From positions 2,852,001-2,916,000 of the forward strand of contig NC_135263.1 in the NCBI RefSeq assembly GCF_964204865.1: DNA of 64,000 nt, read 5' to 3'. The position numbers and the translations under genes were made by a program. Below the pieces are notes generated by a model. The model searched no databases. It had not been told where the DNA came from and saw only the letters and a program-made list of their open reading frames with translations. How positions within the stretch are numbered: position 1 is the first letter of the stretch; each line of letters begins with the position of its first letter. This document shows positions 41,383 to 64,000 of this stretch, in pieces. The DNA comes from Styela clava (Eukaryota).

Positions 41383-44000
41383 TTTTTTTTTTTTTTTGTA
41401 TATATTTATTAATATATAAAACACAGTTGATCGGTACATCTACAACATTATTAATCACTAATCATGAACAATACACAATTCATCATATAAGATAATCAGT
41501 AATTGTATCATCAAATTTTCCATTTTTGATCATGTTTCTTTATTTTGCCATTTTTATATGCAATAATCCGTTCAATTTCCCTCACTTCATACAGATATGA
41601 GGTAAAAACATTAAAAAGCGGTTTCTTTTTCTGTATCTTACAACGATATAGATAAAACCGGGCAGCAAGAAGTATACAGTTACACAATTTGTTATAAAAA
41701 TTACAAACATATCCCAACATGCAGTCTCTCTTCGAAAAGTTAAAATTAATCCCTGTTTTTGAGTATATCCACATGTTTAGAGTTTCCCAAAACTGTTGAA
41801 CAACTATACAATCATAGAAAAGGTGGCTGATAGTTTCAACATTGGAATGACAGCATTCACATGACTCTGATGGAACAAGTTTAAATTTGTACAATCTATC
41901 GTTTAGTACTATAGCACCATGGAACATTTTTACATGAAAAGATTGCAATTTGGTTTTAATAGTACAATAAAAGATATCCATATACAATTTATTCCAATTA
42001 AAATCACTCTCTAAAATAATAAAATCTGCCCATTTTTTTCTTGATTTATCAGGGGATATAAATTTGATCAAGTTCAACCATTCATAGATACTTTTATTTA
42101 CTTTTTCTGATTCGAATGTTTCAGAAATAAAATGAGATACATTCTCTTCAGGGTCACTTAATACACTAAAATCAATACAGTTTCCAATATTGCATAACCA
42201 ATCGTCAGGTAAAACTCCAGTGATGCGATAATAATTTACATACTCTACATCACTATATTGCATGTCATATTTTTCAGTCAACTCTCTATAAGTAAACAGA
42301 ATACCCGCATTTGATAAGTGTCTTACTGCTTTTATACCATGTTCATACCAAGATTTGATAAAAAATTGTTTTCTAGCATAAGAAATACTTTTGTTGTACC
42401 ATATAGGTTGGTCAAAAATTGACATTTTCCAATCAAAAAGCACATTTTTACAGAAATACCAGTTTTTAAATACATTTCGAATGGACGTTAAAGGTAAATG
42501 CTTCAGAACATATGAATTTGAGCTCAATTTTCCTTCAAGCATTGCTTGAAAACAGTATTGGCCAAGCACTTCCATCTCAATCAATTTCCACACTGGGTTA
42601 AGATCCTCATTTAAAAGTGTTTGAATGTATTTCATTTTCTGGGCAACAATGAAATTTTTTATATCTATCATATTAATACCCCCTTTTTCTTTGGGGCCAA
42701 TCAAGGTATTTCGTTTGATCCGCTCCCAAGTTGAACCCCATACTAATACATATATAGTTCCATTCAATTCAGTTAAAAAACTTTCAGGAACATCAATTGG
42801 TAAAACAGTTGCATGATATATTATCTGGGGTAGAATGAGAGACTTAATAATGCAAATCCTCCCCAAAAAAGTCAAATTTCTTGTTTTCCACACCTGGAGT
42901 AGCTTTTTGACTTTGTCTAATATTTGTGGAAAATTTTTGCTGTATATACCCTTCATTTTGTTTGACAGAATAACACCCAATATTTTAATTTTATCGTTCC
43001 AATTCAGAACATAATTACTACTAATCGGGGGGGGGGGGGGGGGGGGGGCGGGGTTCAACCTTAAAGCCAATATACATTGCTTGGCATTTTGCTATATTGA
43101 TTCTGCACCCAGATATAATTCCAAAAATATTTGCAGTATGAAAAAGGGCATCAATACTAGATTGTAATCCATTGGTTATTACAGTTACATCCTCAGCAAG
43201 CATAGAAATTTTCATAGAAATATTCCTCCATTTTATGGGTTCAATTTTGGGGTTTTGCCTGACCATGTTTGCAAAAATTTCGATTACTAATAAAAATGTA
43301 AGACAGCTGAAAGAGTCACCTTGCCTTAAGCCTCTATGGATTCCAAAATCATCTGAAATATGAGCATTATTTGTGACACAACACTTGATATCATTGTAAA
43401 GAATTTTAATCCATTTTATGAATTTAAGATCAAATCCAAATATATGAAGAATTTTGAACAAGAAATCCCATTTCACACTATCATACGCTTTTTGTATATC
43501 AAGAAAAATTAAAGCCCCAGGCAATGATTCAGCGACAGTTAGGTCAATTACATCACAAATCAGTCGAATATTATCCCCTATATTCCTCCCTTTAATAAAT
43601 CCAGTTTGATCAAGATCGACAATTTTGTTGATCACATTACTCATTTGGTTTGTTAATGTTTTACTCAATATTTTATAGTCCACGTTTAATAAAGTTATTG
43701 GGCGATAATTGCTTATACGATGTTCAGTTTGTCCTTTCTTAGGAAGAAGGGTTGTTACTCCCCTTTTTGTGTTTTGCTCAAAGTCCCTTTAACAAATGAG
43801 TGATTGTAGCTAGCCATCAGAAGATGTTTAATATCTTCCCAAAACACCTTATAAAACTCTGCTGGAAGACCATCAAGTCCGGGGGTTTTGTCAGATTTCA
43901 TGGATTTCAAAGCCTCGAAACAAGCGCCCTCTGAGATAACACCAGGACATAAGTCTCAAACTTCAGGTTCCATGTGTGGTATTCTGATCCCTTGCAATAT
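41383..44000 (-). mobile_element. 5'-truncated copy of the L1/Tx1-clade element at 56751-62184
   Basis: Poly-T at 41383-41397, 3'UTR and the C-terminal two thirds of ORF2 are colinear with the intact copy (roughly 90% identity by eye). Homology stops at ...gatcccttgcaatat (44000). Candidate TSD ACGGATTAT at 41368 and 44028. Confidence 0.95.
41511..43990 (-). pseudogene. Disrupted ORF2 (reverse transcriptase + zinc-binding domain) of the truncated L1/Tx1 copy
   Basis: Track ORFs 43021-43683 and 41511-43070 are two frames of one ORF2, split by a poly-C expansion. Catalytic LADD is changed to LAED, and there is another indel near 43765. Confidence 0.92.
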
Positions 44001-56200: not shown

Positions 56201-56800
56201 GGACTGAAGATTTCATTGGCAGGTATGGATCTCTAATGTGAATAAAACAGCGGATAATAACGCAATCGCATTGAAATTGTCGTTTTTATCAAAAAGTAAG
56301 GAATGTTCCTTTAACTGCAAAAAAGGCATAGTGGCTATTTCATCCACGGAAAAAGTTTTGTAAAACACGAATCAATCTGAGGGGTTTTACTTGTTGCTAT
56401 TACAAATTAAAAATATGAGAGTTTCGAATCGACTGGATTTTTCCCTGCGATATTAAATGGTAGCGGTATAAGATGCTGTGAATCAAATATTTTCGGTATA
56501 TCTGTAAGATATATTAACTGATGTAATTTATCTGTCTGTATGTGTTATTTTATAGGTCAGCACACAAAGTCGTTATTTAAATGCGCAATCTCTCCCGTCC
56601 GTTAATTGTCCGCTACACGCGTGTCTGAGCGCTTCCTCCACCCCCTCCCCCACTTGCATTGTCTTCCTCGTCGCCACATAGACACAGACACAGTCCTTTC
56701 AAAAGTACTTGGGAACCACGAACCCAAGTGACGATGAATGAGGCACCAAATCTTCCGCCCCGGGCAGCACGTAGAGTTCGCATTATTTGAGACCTATATT

Positions 56801-58249
56801 ATGAATTCCTATTCTACAGCTGTGAAACATGGAGTGGCGGAAAAAGTTCCGATTGCTCGAGATAAGAGAAAAGCTGTCAACATGGCCATACCCAGACCTC
56901 ATTGTTTACAAATGAAGTTCGAAAGAAATCATCCGGATGTGTTGGAAAAGGGACTGCGAGCGACAGCGAAAAATATTGTACTAAAAGGCGTTACAACTAA
57001 GCAAATCGTTAGTATAGCAGTAAGACCGTACCATACAGTCGATGTCACATGCCGCACTAGAGCAGAGATACTAACACTGGATAAATACCTGAAACAGCAA
57101 AATATAGCTGGATTTAAATGGTTTTTATACGTTGAAGAAAATACAACAGTGAATATATCATGGATTCCAGGGCATATTAAAAAACAGCAACTTCGTTCTA
57201 CATTGTTAGAATTTGTAAAAGAGTTGGATTCTGACATCCAGGAAGCAAAGGATGAAGATGGCATTTTAAATGGATGGATGTATGTATCAGTGCCTACAAA
57301 CCAAATTCAGCAACATCCCATACCAAGTTTCATCTATGTAGAAGGGTGCATGATATCTGTTAAATATCGCGGGCAGCAACAAACATGTATGAAGTGTAAT
57401 GAAGTTGGACACTTTAAATTCGAATGCCCAAAGCAAAATAGATTTATAAACCCTTTGAAAAAGCAAGACAGATTCACCGACAAACAAACATTGATAAGAA
57501 TAAATGATAAAACACAAAGTGAAGGATTGACCACTGATTACAATGATGAAAATGCAGTCAAGCGTGACCACCATAACAATGCTGATAACAGTACTCCAAG
57601 TGTTTTCACTTTAGCAGATTTTATGCCAACTACAGACGAACCTAATTCAAATGATGACAAAAGTGCTGGGTCGAACGATCGTGACTTGGAGACTTCAAAT
57701 ACACCAATGGAGGTCAATGAACAATCTGGAGTTAAAAGATGTAGATCGCCTGATCAGAAAAAACATTTGGCAAATATTAGGCCAAGACTGGATAGCGTAA
57801 ACGACATTGATATACCAAAATGTATTGTATGCGAAGACCAACTTGAAATAATGGACGACAACGCTAAAGAAGCTATCTGCTACAACTGTGAAATCAGGTA
57901 TGAGATTATTAAGCAATGCTGTACTGAAAACGGATACTTTGCTGCAAGTGAAGAGCAAATCAAAAATAGAAATGTGAAATGCAATGTCTGTAACACAGCT
58001 ATGCCACTTACACCTTGTTGTAATGGTATTGGTGAAATATTGGAAAATGATGTTGCTAGGTGTACCACTTGTGAAAATTTATTTCTGAAGTGTTGTTGCT
58101 CTGCTTTGAACACCCTACCAGTGGAGAATGGTTTCGATAAATGCCATAGCGTAGGCTGTGGTAGCTACATAATGCATTGTCCTTGTGGTAGCGTTTCGTA
58201 TACCGATGAATCTTTAGAATGCAGATGTGGAAATACTCTAAATGGCTGA
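56801..58249 (+). CDS. ORF1 (gag-like nucleic-acid-binding protein, ~482 aa) with a CCHC knuckle and a C-terminal Cys-rich array
   Basis: MNSYSTAVK start (SYAxAV-like motif), CMKCNEVGHFKFEC knuckle, and 21 Cys in the last ~140 aa. The upstream ATG at 56738 is in host sequence. Confidence 0.88.
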   Translation: MNSYSTAVKHGVAEKVPIARDKRKAVNMAIPRPHCLQMKFERNHPDVLEKGLRATAKNIVLKGVTTKQIVSIAVRPYHTVDVTCRTRAEILTLDKYLKQQNIAGFKWFLYVEENTTVNISWIPGHIKKQQLRSTLLEFVKELDSDIQEAKDEDGILNGWMYVSVPTNQIQQHPIPSFIYVEGCMISVKYRGQQQTCMKCNEVGHFKFECPKQNRFINPLKKQDRFTDKQTLIRINDKTQSEGLTTDYNDENAVKRDHHNNADNSTPSVFTLADFMPTTDEPNSNDDKSAGSNDRDLETSNTPMEVNEQSGVKRCRSPDQKKHLANIRPRLDSVNDIDIPKCIVCEDQLEIMDDNAKEAICYNCEIRYEIIKQCCTENGYFAASEEQIKNRNVKCNVCNTAMPLTPCCNGIGEILENDVARCTTCENLFLKCCCSALNTLPVENGFDKCHSVGCGSYIMHCPCGSVSYTDESLECRCGNTLNG

Positions 58250-61200
58250 TATTAAATTGAAAATAGCCTCTTTAAATACAGGAGGTATACGAGAATATTC
58301 AAAAAGACGAGAAATTTTTTTGTTATTGAAGAAGAAGGGATTTAATCTTGTCTTCCTACAAGAAACACATAGCAAACAGAATGACGAGAAACAATGGCTG
58401 AGAGAATGGGGTGGTTCTGGAATTTTTTGTAATTACTCGACCAATTCAAGAGGTTTGTGTATTCTATTCGGAAACAATATTTCATTCTCACTGCACACTC
58501 AACATAATGATCCTCAAGGAAGATTTCTCGTGGCCGACATAACTATCGGTGTTGAAAGACTTATTCTGGCAAATATGTATGGACCAAATAACGATAATCC
58601 TAATTGTTTTTTGGAACTACTTCATACTCTTGAGAGCCAACAGAGCCAGCAATTCATAGTTGGAGGTGACTTCAATGTAGTCCTTGACAGTAAAATGGAT
58701 AAAGTGGGCGGCCGAATAAACCATAAAAATAATAAATCAGGACAGATGTTGCATAATATTATGGAAGAACTGAATTTACAAGATTCCTTTAGAGTAATAA
58801 ATCCAAGCAAGAAAGCATACTCCCATTTTCATAAACAATCAAAAACTGCCACCCGAATTGATATGGTGCTAATTTCTCAACATTTATTGCAATATCAGTG
58901 CAAAGCCGATATTATACCTTGTGTTTTGTCTGACCATTCTATAGCATCGTTAATGATTGATATCAATCCTGTCCCCAGAGGTACCGGATACTGGAAGCTG
59001 AACACTTCCTTGTTAAATGATGAGAAATATGTTACTCAAATTAGACAAGTAATCCAAAATACCATAATGGACCACAGCATGGAATACGTTGATCCAAATT
59101 TTATGTGGGATACAATGAAATTAATAATTCGTGGGGAATCAATAGCCTATGCAAGTAGGAGAAAAAAGCTGTGTGAAAAAAAGATGAAAGATCTTGAAAT
59201 ATTAATATCTTCGCTAGAAACCAAGTATGCCAGTCACCAATCTGATGACAATATGCAACAACTGGAAATTGCAAAGCAGTCTCTAAATGAATTGTTGAAG
59301 CAAAAAACTCGTGGCTACCTGATTAGAAGTAAAATTAAATGGGCTGAAGAAGGGGAACATAATACAAAATATTTTTTCGGTCTTGAAAAGAGGCATAAAC
59401 AAAGGACATCTATTGCACAACTGTATGAAAATGATAGAATAATCTCAGATCAAGAACAAATATTGAAATGTATCAAATTATTTTATACAGAATTATACTC
59501 GGAAACATCATCACATTATGTTGATATAGAAGAAATATTGCAAGGGATCGATATACCACACATGGAACCTGAAGTTTCAGACCTATGTCCTGGTGTTATC
59601 ACAGAAGGTGCTTGTTTCGAGGCTTTGAAATCCATGAAATCTGACAAAACACCCGGGCTTGATGGTCTTCCAGCAGAGTTTTATAAGGTGTTTTGGAAGG
59701 ATATCAAACATCTTTTGATGGCTAGCTACAATCATTCATTTTGTAAAGGGACTTTAAGCAAAACACAGAAAAGAGGATTAATAACTCTTCTTCCTAAGAA
59801 AGGACAAACTGAACATTGTATAAGCAATTATCGCCCAATAACTTTATTAAACGTGGACTATAAAATACTGAGCAAAACATTAACAAACCAAATGAGTAAT
59901 GTAATCAACGAAATTGTTGATCTTGATCAAACTGGATTTATTAAGGGGAGGAATATAGGGGATAATATTCGACTGATTTGTGATGTGATTGACATAACCG
60001 TTGCTGAATCATTGCCTGGGGCTTTAATTTTCCTTGATATACAAAAAGCATATGATAGTGTGAAATGGGATTTCTTGTTCAAAATTCTTCATATATTTGG
60101 ATTTGATCTTAAATTCATAAAATGGGTTAAAATCCTTTACAATGATATACAGTGTTGTGTTACAAACAATGGTCATATTTCAAATGATTTTGTAGTCCAT
60201 AGAGGCCTAAGGCAAGGTGATTCTTTCAGTTGTCTTACATTTTTACTGGTAATTGAAATTTTTGCAAACATGGTCAGGCAAAACCCAAAAATTGAACCCA
60301 TAAAATGGAGGGATATTTCTATAAAAATTTCTATGCTTGCTGATGATGTGACAGTAATGACCAATGGATCAAAATCTAGTATTGATGCCCTTTTTCAAAC
60401 TTCAAACATTTTTGGGATTATATCTGGGTGCAAAATTAATATAGCAAAATGTCAAGCAATGTATATTGGCACTAAGATTGGAACCTCCCCGATTAGTAGT
60501 GAATATGGTCTGAATTGGAACGATGAAATTAAAATATTGGGTGTTATTCTGTCAAACAAAATGGAGGGTATATACAGCAAAAATTTTCCTCAAATATTAG
60601 ATAAAGTCAAAAAGCTACTTCAGGTGTGGAAAACAAGAAATTTGACGTTTTTGGGAAGGGTTTGCATTATTAAGTCTCTCATTCTACCCCAGATATTATA
60701 CCATGCAACTGTTTTACCAATCGATGTTCCTGAAAGTTTTTTGACTGAATTGAATAGAAATATATATGTTTTTATATGGGGTTCAACTTGGGAGCGGATC
60801 AAACGAAATACATTGATTGGCCCCAAAGAAAAGGGAGGTGTTGATATGATAGATATAAAAAATTTTATTGTTGCCCAAAAAATTAAATTCATTCAAACAC
60901 TCTTGAATGAGGAAGTTAATCCAGTGTGGAAATTGATTGAGATGGAAGTGCTTAGCCAATACTGTTTTCAAGCATTGCTTGAAGGAAAATTGAGCTCAAA
61001 TTCATATGTTCTGAAGCATTTACCTTTAACATCCATACGAAATGTATTTAAAAACTGGTATTTCTGTAAAAATGTGCTTTTTGATTGGAAAATGTCAAAT
61101 TTTGATCAACCTATATGGTACAACAAAAGTATTTCTTATGCCAGAAAACAATTTTTTATAAAGTCTTGGTATGATCATGGTATAAAAGCTGTAAGACATT

Positions 61201-62027
61201 TAGCAAATGTGGGTAATTTGTTTACTTATAGAGAGTTGACTGAAAAATATGGCATGCAATATAGTGATGAAGAGTATGTGAATTATTATCGCATCACTGG
61301 AGTTCTACCCGATTATTGGTTATGCAATATTGGAAACTGTGTTGATTTTAGTGTAATAAGTGACACTGAAGAGAATGTATGTCATTTTATTTCTGAAACA
61401 TTCGAATCAGGAAAAGTAAATAAAAGCATCTATAAAAAGTTGAACCTTATCAAATTTATATCCCCTGATAAATCAAGAAAAAAATGGACAGATCTTTTGT
61501 ATTTAGAGAGTGATTTTAATTGGAATAAATTGTATATGGATATCTTTTATTGTACTATTGAAACTAAATTGCAATCTTTTCATGTAAAGCTATTTCATGG
61601 TGCCATAGTACTAAACGATAGATTGTATAAATTTAAACTTGTTTCATCAGAGTTATGTGATTTCTGTCATTCGAATGTTGAAACTACTGACCATTTCTTC
61701 TATGATTGTATAGTTGTCCAACAGTTTTGGGAATTTCTGAACATGTGGATATATTCAAAAACAGGGATTAATTTTAACTTTTCAAAGAAAGATTGCATGT
61801 TGGGATATGTTTGCCAATTCTATAACAAATTGTGTAATTGTATACTTCTTACTGCCCGGTTTTATCTATATCGTTGTAAGATACAGAAAAAGAAACCACT
61901 GTTCTATGTTTTTACCTCATATCTTCATGAAGTGAGGGAAATTGAGCGGTTCATTGCACATAAAAATGGCAAAATAAAGAAACATTATCAAAAATGGAAA
62001 ATTTTAGGATATACACACAATAATTGA
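58242..62027 (+). CDS. ORF2 polyprotein: APE endonuclease, reverse transcriptase, C-terminal zinc-binding domain (1261 aa)
   Basis: SLNTGG, LQETH, GGDFN, RID and SDH (APE). WKLN, PGLDG, YRPITLLNVDYK, DIQKAYD, GLRQGD and LADD (RT). CDFC..ETTDHFFYDC. Confidence 0.97.
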   Translation: MADIKLKIASLNTGGIREYSKRREIFLLLKKKGFNLVFLQETHSKQNDEKQWLREWGGSGIFCNYSTNSRGLCILFGNNISFSLHTQHNDPQGRFLVADITIGVERLILANMYGPNNDNPNCFLELLHTLESQQSQQFIVGGDFNVVLDSKMDKVGGRINHKNNKSGQMLHNIMEELNLQDSFRVINPSKKAYSHFHKQSKTATRIDMVLISQHLLQYQCKADIIPCVLSDHSIASLMIDINPVPRGTGYWKLNTSLLNDEKYVTQIRQVIQNTIMDHSMEYVDPNFMWDTMKLIIRGESIAYASRRKKLCEKKMKDLEILISSLETKYASHQSDDNMQQLEIAKQSLNELLKQKTRGYLIRSKIKWAEEGEHNTKYFFGLEKRHKQRTSIAQLYENDRIISDQEQILKCIKLFYTELYSETSSHYVDIEEILQGIDIPHMEPEVSDLCPGVITEGACFEALKSMKSDKTPGLDGLPAEFYKVFWKDIKHLLMASYNHSFCKGTLSKTQKRGLITLLPKKGQTEHCISNYRPITLLNVDYKILSKTLTNQMSNVINEIVDLDQTGFIKGRNIGDNIRLICDVIDITVAESLPGALIFLDIQKAYDSVKWDFLFKILHIFGFDLKFIKWVKILYNDIQCCVTNNGHISNDFVVHRGLRQGDSFSCLTFLLVIEIFANMVRQNPKIEPIKWRDISIKISMLADDVTVMTNGSKSSIDALFQTSNIFGIISGCKINIAKCQAMYIGTKIGTSPISSEYGLNWNDEIKILGVILSNKMEGIYSKNFPQILDKVKKLLQVWKTRNLTFLGRVCIIKSLILPQILYHATVLPIDVPESFLTELNRNIYVFIWGSTWERIKRNTLIGPKEKGGVDMIDIKNFIVAQKIKFIQTLLNEEVNPVWKLIEMEVLSQYCFQALLEGKLSSNSYVLKHLPLTSIRNVFKNWYFCKNVLFDWKMSNFDQPIWYNKSISYARKQFFIKSWYDHGIKAVRHLANVGNLFTYRELTEKYGMQYSDEEYVNYYRITGVLPDYWLCNIGNCVDFSVISDTEENVCHFISETFESGKVNKSIYKKLNLIKFISPDKSRKKWTDLLYLESDFNWNKLYMDIFYCTIETKLQSFHVKLFHGAIVLNDRLYKFKLVSSELCDFCHSNVETTDHFFYDCIVVQQFWEFLNMWIYSKTGINFNFSKKDCMLGYVCQFYNKLCNCILLTARFYLYRCKIQKKKPLFYVFTSYLHEVREIERFIAHKNGKIKKHYQKWKILGYTHNN

Positions 62028-62128
62028 TTATTTTTATATGATGAATTGTGATTATGTAGTTTCTATGAATATTGATTAATAATGCTGTAGATATTGTAGA
62101 TGTATCGATTAACTGTGTTTTATATAAT

Positions 62129-62138
62129 AATAAATATA

Positions 62139-62184
<46 letters not shown>
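62129..62184 (+). other. Polyadenylation signal and 43-nt poly(A) tail of the retrotransposon
   Basis: AATAAA at 62129-62134 and an uninterrupted A run at 62142-62184. Confidence 0.92.
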
Positions 62185-62186
<2 letters not shown>

Positions 62187-64000
62187 GGCTCGTCTAGCTT
62201 TCGGCTTTGATTGTATGCCGTGTAGATACTGGCTGCCGTCAGATCAATCAAATCTAAATAATAAATATATATCTAATCGTCCGACCCATGTACAAGTTGA
62301 TCTATTATTAGATGTTTATATGTTAATGCGAATATTTAAAATTTTCTACTTTGACATTTGCGTAGGCCGTATAGGCGTAGACGTAGAGTATACAAAATTC
62401 TAACACAGGTTATTTTGAAGAAGAAGAAATTAGAAAAACTACTACTCAATTCGGCTGTATTTTCCTAACACCAAAGTTCCGTTTACCAATAAAGTAATGA
62501 AAAAGAATTACCTGCAAAAAACTCCAAAGCGTACAATGTTCTGCGATGGGGATTATTGCAATTTATGCAACATCTCTCGATTTTGCATACCCAGTCCATG
62601 AGCAATAAAACAGCTGTTACAATTAGTCTCAGGATAGCGGATACTACAAGAAGCCAAAACACGACGAGTTCATCAACTTCTTGTTCTAAAATAAGATTTA
62701 TCATTTAAATTCAATTCATATATTCTGCAGAAATGATTAGATGCGCACGATTTAAGCATTGTCACATATAAAGTAACGCTGTAGCAATGGTTAAATTAGC
62801 TCGAAGAGTCCTAGATTAGTTAGAAGTATACAAATATGCCTTACCGAACTCTTTGCATTCATTATTCTGACCAAGATCAACGCAAACTGTGCAATTTCCT
62901 TTGGTTACAGTACAGTTGACTTCGTTCCCAGCTCCGCAGTAATCAGATAATCCTTGGGTTATTGTATCATTCACAGTAACCAGCCATCTATTGGAGAATA
63001 TGGAGTAGATTATCATAATCAGGTTTCCTACAGGTACTACTCTATGCGCGATTTTAGATTTCCAGTCATTGCCACACTTGCAATATTTCGTTGAGCAGTT
63101 GAACTCGAAACAGCATAAAGACGGCATGCTTTTTAATTTAGGATATTTTATGTAATAAATACCTGTTAATACGAATAAAGTATTTAGTTTCCAAATATGA
63201 TTTATTGGAAACTCATGCATGGGTTAAATAGGGCAGTGGGGCCAGCTTTTTCTAACGAACCTGATATTTCATAACAAGAAATTTTAAAAAATCTCGCGAC
63301 TCAAGGACATTCTCCAAGACTAAACGGCATGTAATACTTTAATGGTCGTAAAATTGCATGACTAAGATATATTCATCATTTTTACATTATATCATGAACT
63401 CGAAGTAAAAAAGCTGCATTTGTTTATCATCAGCGAATTTTTGAAATCGCAGTGTGGCTTAACTTAAGCAAAAAATGAGTTCCTAAATTTTTACGTGGTA
63501 ATACTTCCCGCATATGCAATTACTATGGGGCAATATTCCAACATCAAATATTGCATAAAAAAAGTTATTTTAGATTTTTTATATAAACCAGTTACGCGAA
63601 ATAGATTTTGATTTTCGTGCCACCCAGTTTTGGGCGGTGACCCGTAGGCTGGGAAACATTGATAACATAGTGTATATCTAATTTTAATGTGAGTATATAT
63701 TGCCACGAATTTGTAGAAGAATTGCATTGGCTTGCAAAACTAGAAATTTATATATTGAACTTCACTAAATATGAAAATTTTGGAAACTATTTTACACTAT
63801 TTTTAAAGTGTTTTTTTTTTAACTACATGCAAACTTTTCTTTAAAAATGTTATACAGACATCAAACCGTGCACTTTATATAGATAGAAAATTCCTAACAC
63901 GCTCAAATAACTCATTTTTCAGTGCCAAATACATTTTATATTTTCGAGAACATATTGTACTAATCTAGATTTAGTAAAAATTGATGCCTTGCATATGGCA

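What the first reader, a model, noticed from the sequence alone, without database searches (positions are those of the whole stretch)
56613..62253. Young intact L1/Tx1 element inserted antisense inside a coding exon of a claudin-like gene (natural knockout allele)
Seen in sequence: read on the minus strand, the DNA right of the poly(A) encodes ...FFA-DLIDLTAASIYTAYNQSRKLDEP. The DNA left of the element's 5' end encodes FGASFIVTW...GGSAQTRV*. Joining them through an A5 tract (ggcaccAAAAActggc) gives an uninterrupted 221-aa tetraspan protein. Known: AASIYT at the end of TM3 and (Y/F)GxS(F/Y)xxxW at the start of TM4 are PMP22/claudin-superfamily signatures, and L1-type endonucleases prime at T-tracts. 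Inference: with both element ORFs intact, a pure 43-A tail and no other lesion in the host gene, the insertion is very recent and may be polymorphic. No target-site duplication beyond at most 3 A's is visible, which is atypical for TPRT.
Basis: partly seen in the sequence, partly recalled or inferred. Interest (0 to 1): 0.8.

Follow-up and report, generated by a model that had tools for sequence, protein, structure and literature searches.

The report
Young LINE insertion disrupting a claudin-like gene
A very recent L1-type jumping gene has landed backwards in the last coding exon of one copy of a multi-copy claudin-like gene in the sea squirt Styela clava and removed a few codons, which is an ordinary gene-breaking event.

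Summary
The sequence is mostly as described. A 5.4-kb non-LTR retrotransposon lies on the + strand. It has ORF1 with a CCHC knuckle, ORF2 with APE endonuclease, reverse transcriptase and zf-RVT, and a pure A43 tail. It splits the last exon of a minus-strand three-exon gene, NCBI LOC144432023 of Styela clava. ORF2 aligns colinearly with human L1 ORF2p (E 6e-102).

The host belongs to a tandem family of divergent claudin/PMP22-like four-helix membrane proteins. Pfam PF00822 scores 26.1 bits against a cut-off of 26.7 on an intact paralog, and fold-search hits are claudins and relatives.

All 7 paralogs examined carry 26 nt between the two flanks, encoding ...DEPV-PGEEICGR-FGA... The window keeps 8 of these nt (56751-56758). 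So the insertion came with a 16-18 nt target deletion, a 4-nt microhomology at the 5' junction and no T-tract. The intact protein would be 229 aa, not 221.

In this family, 3 of 6 other independent young insertions also lack a target-site duplication. Copies differ by about 0.1%, so the family is very young.

No empty allele appeared in 4 sequencing runs, but coverage was too weak to test polymorphism.

This is ordinary biology and the interest is low. The scan had noted another claudin-like cluster elsewhere in this genome.

The parts
56613..56758 (-). Distal part of host exon 3: codons (C)GRFGASFIVTW...GGSAQTRV plus the stop codon at 56615-56613 (TM4 and C-terminal tail). 56751-56758 (TCTTCCGC) is host sequence, and 56755-56758 (CCGC) is shared with the element's 5' end as microhomology.
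   Evidence: All 7 paralogs continue ...GGCACC(A/G)AATCTTCCGC|ATA..., so host sequence runs on to 56758.
56755..62141 (+). Body of the L1-type non-LTR retrotransposon. The 5' end falls at 56755-56759, with a short 5' UTR up to the ORF1 ATG at 56801.
   Evidence: The same 5' start, CCGCCCCGGGCAGCACG..., occurs in a different context at C8:23266599-23266631 and in a contig of run X5 that aligns from 56755. The C17 copy is 100% identical from 56767.
56801..58249 (+). ORF1, 482 aa, with a CCHC zinc knuckle and a Cys-rich C-terminal region.
   Evidence: zf-CCHC E 5.6e-4, residues 195-211.
58242..62027 (+). ORF2, 1261 aa: APE-type endonuclease, reverse transcriptase and a C-terminal zinc-binding domain. 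It overlaps ORF1 by 8 nt.
   Evidence: Exo_endo_phos 10-232, RVT_1 518-770, zf-RVT 1097-1163. (human L1 ORF2p, E 5.7e-102, residues 6-919 against 8-922).
62142..62184 (+). Poly(A) tail of 43 uninterrupted A. The last 0-2 A may be the host's own AA.
62185..62253 (-). Proximal part of host exon 3: (D)LIDLTAASIYTAYNQSRKLDEP(V), the end of TM3 and the start of extracellular loop 2.
   Evidence: The acceptor at 62255-62254 is confirmed by the joint 62253->62512 in X5.
62512..62685 (-). Host exon 2 (TM2, the intracellular loop with CC..C..C, and the start of TM3), with phase-1 introns on both sides.
62845..63127 (-). Host exon 1 from the ATG (MPSLCC...): TM1 and the Cys-rich extracellular loop 1.
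   Evidence: It is 100% identical to residues 1-94 of XP_077976154.1.
61653..61736 (-). Antisense-ORF2 stretch that the NCBI gene model uses as its terminal coding exon (KFPKLLDNYTIIEEMVSSFNIRMTEIT plus stop). The model splices it from a donor made of host G 62185 plus the antisense poly-T.
   Evidence: This is a model only; the joint was not seen in run X5.

Best explanation
A member of a currently or very recently active L1-type (L1/Tx1 group) LINE family of Styela clava inserted by target-primed reverse transcription, in antisense orientation. It landed in the last coding exon of LOC144432023, one member of a tandem cluster of divergent claudin/PMP22-like tetraspan genes.

Inferred mechanism. 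The bottom strand was nicked at 5'-GCCAGTT/CCGGG-3', so only two T were available to pair with the poly(A). The cDNA was joined to the top strand 16-18 nt upstream through a 4-nt microhomology (CCGC). Instead of a target-site duplication there is therefore a small target-site deletion, which removes the codons for P-G-E-E-I and part of C in the conserved extracellular-loop-2 motif PVPGEEICGRFGA.

Consequence. TM4 and the C-terminal tail are separated from the rest of the gene by 5.4 kb, and this gene copy can no longer encode the 229-aa protein that its paralogs encode.

Shown: the element's anatomy, the paralog comparison, the near-identity of family copies and the claudin-like nature of the family. 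Inferred: the order of the nicks, the exact pre-insertion sequence of this locus and the loss of function.
For: Element anatomy. L1 ORF2p is the best solved relative, colinear over 914 residues.

Paralogs: 7 of 7 carry TCTTCCGC-ATA(T/A)TT(T/C)(C/T)TCTCC(C/T)GG-AA between the flanks, and all 7 have an open exon 3 encoding PVPGE(E/K)(I/L)CGRFGA. The window keeps the first 8 nt.

Element 5' end: CCGCCCCGGGCA... is seen in two other contexts.

Family youth: 9 places match the 3' 642 nt at 99-100%. They represent 7 independent insertions once two segmental-duplicate pairs are merged, and 5 of the 7 are 5'-truncated. The window copy differs from the C17 copy by about 5 nt in 5313 aligned nt.

Target-site duplications of 9-14 nt are present in 3 of 6 other independent insertions and absent in the other 3.

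Host family: PF00822 E 9.6e-6, 26.1 bits, profile positions 10-159 of 161 on paralog XP_039265596.1. Exon 3 alone of 3 of 3 paralogs tested matches PF00822 positions 114-159 at E 0.001-0.006. The best PDB match of the family profile is claudin-18 (E 0.015). Foldseek hits are claudin-19/-3/-9/-4, GSG1L, and chains from TARP and GARLH4 complexes.

Wei et al. 2020 (PMC7540406, passages read) report LINEs as the youngest and transcribed TE class in S. clava.
Against: The true empty allele of this locus was not observed, so the pre-insertion sequence is inferred from paralogs that are 70-95% identical in the flank.

No run was shown to bridge either junction independently of the assembly. X1 holds the exact left flank at depth 12.3, but no bridging contig was listed. 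Contigs break at the poly(A).

The structure model is of low confidence (mean pLDDT 48.9), and the Foldseek E-values are only 2e-3 and weaker.

PF00822 stays 0.6 bits under the gathering cut-off.

Assignment to L1 as against Tx1 was not resolved.
Confidence: 0.85

Rival explanations
1. One reading: the element primed at a T-tract and inserted cleanly into ggcaccAAAAActggc, so the empty allele encodes a 221-aa protein with ...DEPVFGASF....
For: The two flanks are in frame if 5 A are assumed between them.
Against: 7 of 7 paralogs have 26 nt there, not 5, and 8 of these nt are still present in the window directly after the AAA. The in-frame result has a 1-in-3 chance. The motif PVPGEEICGRFGA is conserved in all 7 paralogs, and in related form in more distant family proteins.
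Confidence: 0.03
2. Assembly artefact: the element was joined into the exon by a chimeric read or a mis-join and is not present at this place in any animal.
For: No independent run was shown to bridge either junction. The element is a repeat with at least 9 near-identical 3' ends.
Against: The poly(A) abuts the host exon exactly where the paralog sequence resumes. The 5' junction shows microhomology and a short target deletion. Both are hallmarks of real retrotransposition, not of a mis-join. No alternative empty copy of the locus exists elsewhere in the assembly.
Confidence: 0.05
3. The gene copy was already a pseudogene, for example already carrying the 16-18 nt deletion, and the element landed in dead DNA.
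For: The copy is one of many tandem paralogs. The RNA-like contigs that lie on its exons in X5 carry the variants of paralogs, not of this copy.
Against: Exons 1, 2 and both halves of exon 3 are open. The start codon, both introns' GT..AG sites and the stop codon are in place. The deletion ends exactly at the two element junctions, which fits one event.
Confidence: 0.07
4. Exonisation: the antisense element supplies a new terminal exon, so the locus makes a 202-aa protein without TM4, as in NCBI model XP_077976154.1, with a function of its own.
For: The model exists. It uses a GT donor formed by host G 62185 plus the poly-T, and an AG acceptor at 61738-61737.
Against: The joint 62186->61736 was not reported in the one RNA-like run laid. 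A claudin-like protein without TM4 is unlikely to fold (inference). Gene models over repeats are often computational.
Confidence: 0.05

Closest known systems
Human/mouse LINE-1 (L1) and its insertions with target-site deletion
   Same: Two ORFs. ORF2 has an APE endonuclease, RT and a C-terminal Cys-rich domain, colinear with human L1 ORF2p over residues 6-919 (E 5.7e-102). It has a poly(A) tail. Most copies are 5'-truncated and target-site duplications are variable. Small target deletions and microhomology at the 5' junction are described for L1; this point is recalled from the literature and was not read here.
   Different: ORF1 carries a CCHC knuckle and a Cys-rich tail rather than the mammalian coiled-coil/RRM/CTD type (the mammalian type is recalled). 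In 3 of 4 cases where the nick site can be inferred it reads TT/C rather than the T-rich TTTT/AA (the consensus is recalled). The 5' UTR is very short, about 45 nt.
Ascidian 'pol-like proteins' (Ciona intestinalis Q76IK4, Q76IK6; Phallusia mammillata A0A6F9DMW6)
   Same: These are the closest named relatives of the RT region, at 41-43% identity and with the same Pfam architecture PF03372/PF14529 + PF00078 + PF13966.
   Different: Identity is only about 40-44%, so the Styela family is a separate lineage. Their clade names (L1 or Tx1) are not given by the source and were not established here.
Claudins / PMP22-EMP-MP20 / TARP-GSG1L-LHFPL tetraspans (Pfam PF00822 and clan)
   Same: Four predicted helices, with strands in extracellular loops 1 and 2. 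PF00822 aligns over profile positions 10-159 of 161. The best PDB sequence match is claudin-18, and Foldseek hits are claudins and relatives. Loop 1 has W...GL-x3-C-x7-C (sequence).
   Different: The score is just under Pfam's cut-off. The protein has GLS instead of GLW, 7 residues instead of 8-10 between the loop-1 cysteines (the signature is recalled), extra cysteines in loop 1 and a Cys-rich intracellular loop. Exon-1 relatives numbered only 5 among 1.84 billion representatives.

Membership tests
L1-group (L1/Tx1) non-LTR retrotransposon | ORF2 with an N-terminal APE-type endonuclease followed by a reverse transcriptase | tested here: met
   Exo_endo_phos 10-232 and RVT_1 518-770 (E 8.8e-34). 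The sequence contains LNTGG, QETH, GGDFN, SDH and LADD; their role as catalytic motifs is recalled.
L1-group (L1/Tx1) non-LTR retrotransposon | ORF2 closer to L1-group ORF2 than to other LINE clades | tested here: inconclusive
   human L1 ORF2p E 5.7e-102 over 914 colinear residues, against R2 proteins at E 6e-15. The PDB holds no CR1, RTE, Jockey or I ORF2 for comparison. No reference phylogeny could be built, so L1 versus Tx1 remains unresolved.
L1-group (L1/Tx1) non-LTR retrotransposon | 3' poly(A) tail and frequent 5' truncation | tested here: met
   A43 in the window. Tails of 27-43 A in the 5 copies measured. 5 of 7 independent young insertions are 5'-truncated.
L1-group (L1/Tx1) non-LTR retrotransposon | Target-site duplication flanking the insertion | tested here: not met
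   This copy has none; paralogs imply a 16-18 nt deletion. In the family, 3 of 6 other independent insertions have duplications of 9-14 nt and 3 have none of 7 nt or more within 400 nt. The feature is typical but not obligatory for L1 (recalled).
Tx1 clade | Sequence-specific insertion into repeats or multicopy RNA genes | tested here: not met
   The flanks of the 7 independent young insertions are unrelated to each other. The definition is taken from PMC4640811 (passage read). Not all Tx1-clade elements need be site-specific (recalled).
PMP22_Claudin (PF00822) | Score at or above Pfam's gathering cut-off (26.7 bits) | tested here: not met
   Full-length paralogs score 26.1, 25.6 and 24.2 bits (E 1e-5 to 4e-5), covering profile positions 10-159 of 161. 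A precomputed PF00822.26 label exists for two of them. The window's own exons were searched singly and give no hit. The joined model was not searched, by rule.
PMP22_Claudin (PF00822) | Four-helix fold with a beta-sheet formed by the extracellular loops | tested here: inconclusive
   The paralog model has helices at 22-44, 98-131, 140-168 and 187-209 and strands in both loops, but mean pLDDT is 48.9. The 4 best Foldseek rows are claudin-19 and claudin-3 chains (E 2e-3 to 4e-3, TM 0.43-0.60). All other listed rows come from claudin, GSG1L, TARP or GARLH4 entries.
Claudin proper | Loop-1 signature W...GLW-x2-C-x8-10-C (recalled) | tested here: not met
   The sequence reads RWLVTVNDTITQGLSDYCGAGNEVNC: GLS instead of GLW, and 7 residues between the cysteines.

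The most novel reading that the evidence does not exclude
The insertion is a segregating, essentially new event of an L1-type lineage that is still mobile in the invasive ascidian Styela clava. Its antisense poly-T and a cryptic acceptor inside ORF2 are actually used, giving a claudin-like protein without TM4 as in the NCBI model. That would make this a datable live example of LINE-driven gene disruption and exonisation in a tunicate.
Probability: 0.12. Interest if true: 0.4.

Novelty: new member of a known kind. Interest (0 to 1): 0.2.

Why it matters
The finding documents that an L1-type LINE family in Styela clava is extremely young. Copies are about 99.9% identical, and one copy has both reading frames open. 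It also gives a clean example of exon disruption with a target-site deletion in a tunicate. The example could serve as a presence/absence marker in population studies of this invasive species.

The disrupted gene is one of many near-identical paralogs, so a phenotype is unlikely. The mechanism is textbook LINE biology.

The host family may be of more interest than the insertion. It is a lineage-restricted, tandemly expanded set of divergent claudin-like proteins with a conserved PVPGEEICGRFGA loop.

Tried and rejected
Rejected on the paralog comparison.

**An 11-nt deletion with host CCCGG retained at the left junction.** I considered this alternative and rejected it. CCGCCCCGGGCA... occurs as one block in two other contexts: C8 and an X5 contig.

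**A longer 5' UTR in a source copy.** The 30 letters that precede 56755 in an X5 contig were searched in the genome with up to 3 mismatches and gave 0 matches. What that contig's upstream 205 letters are remains unexplained.

**Empty allele.** The flank searches of the whole assembly found only paralogs and no haplotig with an empty site. The single read-laying run on X1, X20, X14 and X5 gave no joint across the element. The uninterrupted contig in X5 carries 7 of 8 variants of paralog L038, and the X14/X20 reads carry 6 of 6 variants of L040/L042, so these are paralogs and not the empty allele. X20 had only 0-2 reads on the left flank. Polymorphism therefore stays untested.

**Pfam on the window's single exons.** No hit except a chance PsbN match.

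**Exhaustive search with exon 1.** Only 5 proteins were found. The word-based search with P0003 also gave only 5, all Styela clava.

**Clade assignment from the literature.** Searches 'Styela clava + retrotransposon' (3 papers), 'Tx1 + Ciona + non-LTR retrotransposon' (2 papers) and 'ascidian/claudin/Ciona/PMP22' (33 papers, 12 listed) turned up nothing on this element or gene family. I read only listings, plus passages of PMC7540406 and PMC4640811. Supplementary Tables S12/S13 of PMC7540406 (TE classes and their expression) may name this family but are closed.

**Joined model.** I did not build or search the joined spliced protein. I used natural full-length paralog proteins from the databases instead.

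**Revival.** I propose no assay that would mobilise the element, and I single out no copy for that.
Full report
**What is in the sequence.**
The window is G000:C18:2852001-2916000 of a 377-Mb assembly. Database names of identical proteins identify the organism as Styela clava.

Between about 56755 and 62184 the + strand carries a non-LTR retrotransposon:
- ORF1 is open to 58249. The listed ATG at 56738 lies in host DNA, and the first in-element ATG is at 56801.
- ORF2 runs 58242-62027, is 1261 aa and overlaps ORF1 by 8 nt.
- A short 3' UTR follows, then 43 uninterrupted A at 62142-62184.

Pfam finds a CCHC knuckle in ORF1. In ORF2 it finds Exo_endo_phos/Exo_endo_phos_2, RVT_1 (E 8.8e-34) and zf-RVT. 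Against all solved structures, the best matches are human L1 ORF2p chains (E 5.7e-102, residues 6-919 colinear with 8-922). R2 proteins follow far behind at E 6e-15. The closest named proteins are ascidian 'pol-like proteins' of Ciona and Phallusia, at 41-43% identity in the RT region.

The element is therefore an L1-group LINE. I could not decide between L1 proper and Tx1.

**The host gene.**
On the minus strand there are three exons:
- exon 1 at 63127-62845
- exon 2 at 62685-62512
- exon 3 starting at 62253

Both introns are phase 1 and have GT..AG ends. The joint 62253->62512 appears in contigs of run X5. Exon 3 runs to 62185, is interrupted by the element, and resumes at 56758 down to the stop at 56615-56613.

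Exon 1 is 100% identical to residues 1-94 of XP_077976154.1, 'uncharacterized protein LOC144432023 [Styela clava]'.

Searching the whole assembly with both flanks found a tandem cluster of paralogs on the same contig, two of them 95-96% identical. In all 7 paralogs examined, the base matching window 56750 and the base matching 62185 are separated by 26 nt. In the five closest this reads TCTTCCGCATATTTCTTCTCCCGGAA. Exon 3 is open in all 7 and encodes ...KLD(E/D/K/Q)PVPGE(E/K)(I/L)CGRFGA(S/A/T)FI....

The window still has TCTTCCGC at 56751-56758.
- The bases ATATTTCTTCTCCCGG, plus possibly the AA, are missing. That is 16-18 nt.
- The ancestral product was 229 aa, like P0009 and P0006, not 221 aa.
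- The target offered only two T on the primed strand (5'-GCCAGTT/CCGGG-3'), not a T-tract.

**The element's 5' end.**
The window reads ...TCTTCCGC|CCCGGGCAGCACGTAGAG.... The block CCGCCCCGGGCAGCACGTAGAGTTCGCATTATT occurs again at C8:23266599-23266631 in unrelated surroundings. A contig of run X5 also aligns from exactly 56755, with 205 other letters in front.

CCGC therefore belongs both to the host, as the paralogs show, and to the element. This is a 4-nt microhomology at the 5' junction.

The 30 letters preceding it in the X5 contig are absent from the assembly at up to 3 mismatches. I cannot say what that contig's upstream part is.

**How typical is the missing target-site duplication?**
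The 3' 642 nt of the element match 9 places at 99-100%. Two pairs share identical flanks and are segmental duplicates, which leaves 7 independent insertions.
- Five of the 7 are 5'-truncated, at 59176, 60505, about 60698, 60819 and 60984.
- The C17 copy reaches the 5' region, but it lacks 93 nt of ORF1 and is split at about 60848 by roughly 4.3 kb of other DNA.
- Duplications of 14, 12 and 9-10 nt flank three of the six other insertions.
- The other three have none of 7 nt or more within 400 nt.

A copy without a duplication is therefore common in this family.

**Age.**
The window copy and the C17 copy differ at about 5 of 5313 aligned positions: 100% over 1136 nt, 99.86% over 2853 nt and 99.92% over 1324 nt. 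That is far below the 1.72% heterozygosity reported for the species (PMC7540406, passage read). The same paper states that LINEs dominate the lowest-divergence class of repeats and are found in RNA-seq data.

Run X5 is labelled RNA only by guess. It holds contigs covering 56791-61256 with 4 differences and 61233-62090 with none.

**Is the insertion polymorphic?**
This could not be settled. One read-laying run laid X1, X20, X14 and X5 on 56650-62649 and reported no joint that skips the element. The evidence in each run is limited:
- X1 carries the exact left flank at depth 12.3. No bridging piece was listed, and its contigs break at the poly(A).
- X20, raw Hi-C reads of which 6% were read, put 0-2 reads on the left flank.
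- The one uninterrupted contig, in X5, runs on behind 56758 with ATATTTCTTCTCCCGGAACT. It carries 7 of 8 variants of paralog L038.
- The X14 and X20 reads carry 6 of 6 variants of L040/L042.

All of these come from paralogs. They confirm that uninterrupted exons with the extra 18 nt exist and are present in an RNA-like data set. They say nothing about an empty allele at this locus.

**What the host family is.**
The window's exons give no Pfam hit when searched one by one. Natural sequences served instead:
- Exon 3 alone of 3 of 3 paralogs tested matches PMP22_Claudin positions 114-159 of 161, at E 0.0014-0.0055.
- Full-length paralog proteins score 26.1, 25.6 and 24.2 bits against a cut-off of 26.7, and the alignment covers positions 10-159.
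- A profile of nine family proteins has claudin-18 as its best PDB match (E 0.015).
- An AlphaFold model of paralog P0006 is poor (pLDDT 48.9). It shows four helices with strands in both outer loops.
- Its 4 best Foldseek rows are claudin-19 and claudin-3 chains (E 2e-3 to 4e-3). Every other listed row comes from a claudin, GSG1L, TARP-AMPA-receptor or GARLH4-GABA-A entry. I take the 160-200-residue chains in those entries to be the claudin-like auxiliary subunits.

The classic loop-1 signature (recalled) is not met: the protein has GLS instead of GLW and 7 residues between the cysteines.

I therefore file the family as a divergent member of the claudin/PMP22 superfamily, not as a claudin proper. 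It is large and local: 27 exon-1-like matches on C18, C2, C13 and C14. Outside it, the exhaustive exon-1 search found only 5 representative proteins.

**Consequence.**
The insertion removes part of the most conserved stretch of loop 2. It also puts TM4 and the tail 5.4 kb away, on the far side of an antisense LINE.

NCBI's model for the locus, P0001 of 202 aa, ends ...KLDEP-KFPKLLDNYTIIEEMVSSFNIRMTEIT. That tail is encoded antisense in ORF2 at 61736-61653. It is reached from a GT donor made of host G 62185 plus the poly-T, through an AG acceptor at 61738-61737. The joint was not seen in X5, and I treat it as a prediction.

With at least 7 intact paralogs nearby, loss of this copy is unlikely to matter to the animal (inference).

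**Verdict.**
The biology is a standard recent LINE insertion with a target-site deletion into one member of a redundant gene family. It is a new instance of a known kind of event. No paper found by my three searches describes it.

Noticed in passing
L053:1495-1527 (G000:C8:23266599-23266631, minus strand): A 33-nt exact copy of the element's extreme 5' end (window 56755-56787) sits alone in unrelated DNA. An X5 contig also starts matching at 56755, after 205 letters that are absent from the assembly at up to 3 mismatches. The origin of this shared 5' block is unexplained.
   Followed up: partly
L045:2885-6865 and L008 (G000:C17:7861884-7871588): The only other copy reaching the 5' region is 99.9-100% identical. 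It lacks 93 nt of ORF1 (window 57903-57995, in the Cys-rich repeat region), has a roughly 26-nt tandem duplication at its 5' end, is split by about 4.3 kb of foreign DNA near 60848, and has a 9-10 nt target-site duplication.
   Followed up: partly
window 41399-42015 (-): An older relative of the same LINE, 87% identical to the 3' end of the young element, lies elsewhere in the window. Many 76-90% copies are spread over the genome.
   Followed up: no
window 61653-61736 (-) and 62185: NCBI model XP_077976154.1 for the disrupted gene ends in an exon taken from the antisense strand of ORF2. It uses a splice donor created by the host G plus the element's poly-T.
   Followed up: partly
G000:C18:2.68-2.95 Mb and G000:C2:8.9-9.27 Mb: There are two large tandem clusters of the claudin-like family, with 27 exon-1-like matches in all. 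Exon-1 relatives are almost absent from public protein libraries: 5 hits among 1.84 billion representatives.
   Followed up: partly
G000:C9:2972747/3015290 and C9:5232300/5247655: Two pairs of young truncated copies have identical flanks. These are recent segmental duplications of about 15-43 kb spacing that postdate the insertions.
   Followed up: no
(four insertions with an inferable nick site): Three of four inferable first-strand nick sites read TT/C on the primed strand (the window, L047 and L051/52), and the fourth reads TC/G. This may hint at a target preference different from mammalian L1, but the sample is too small to say.
   Followed up: no
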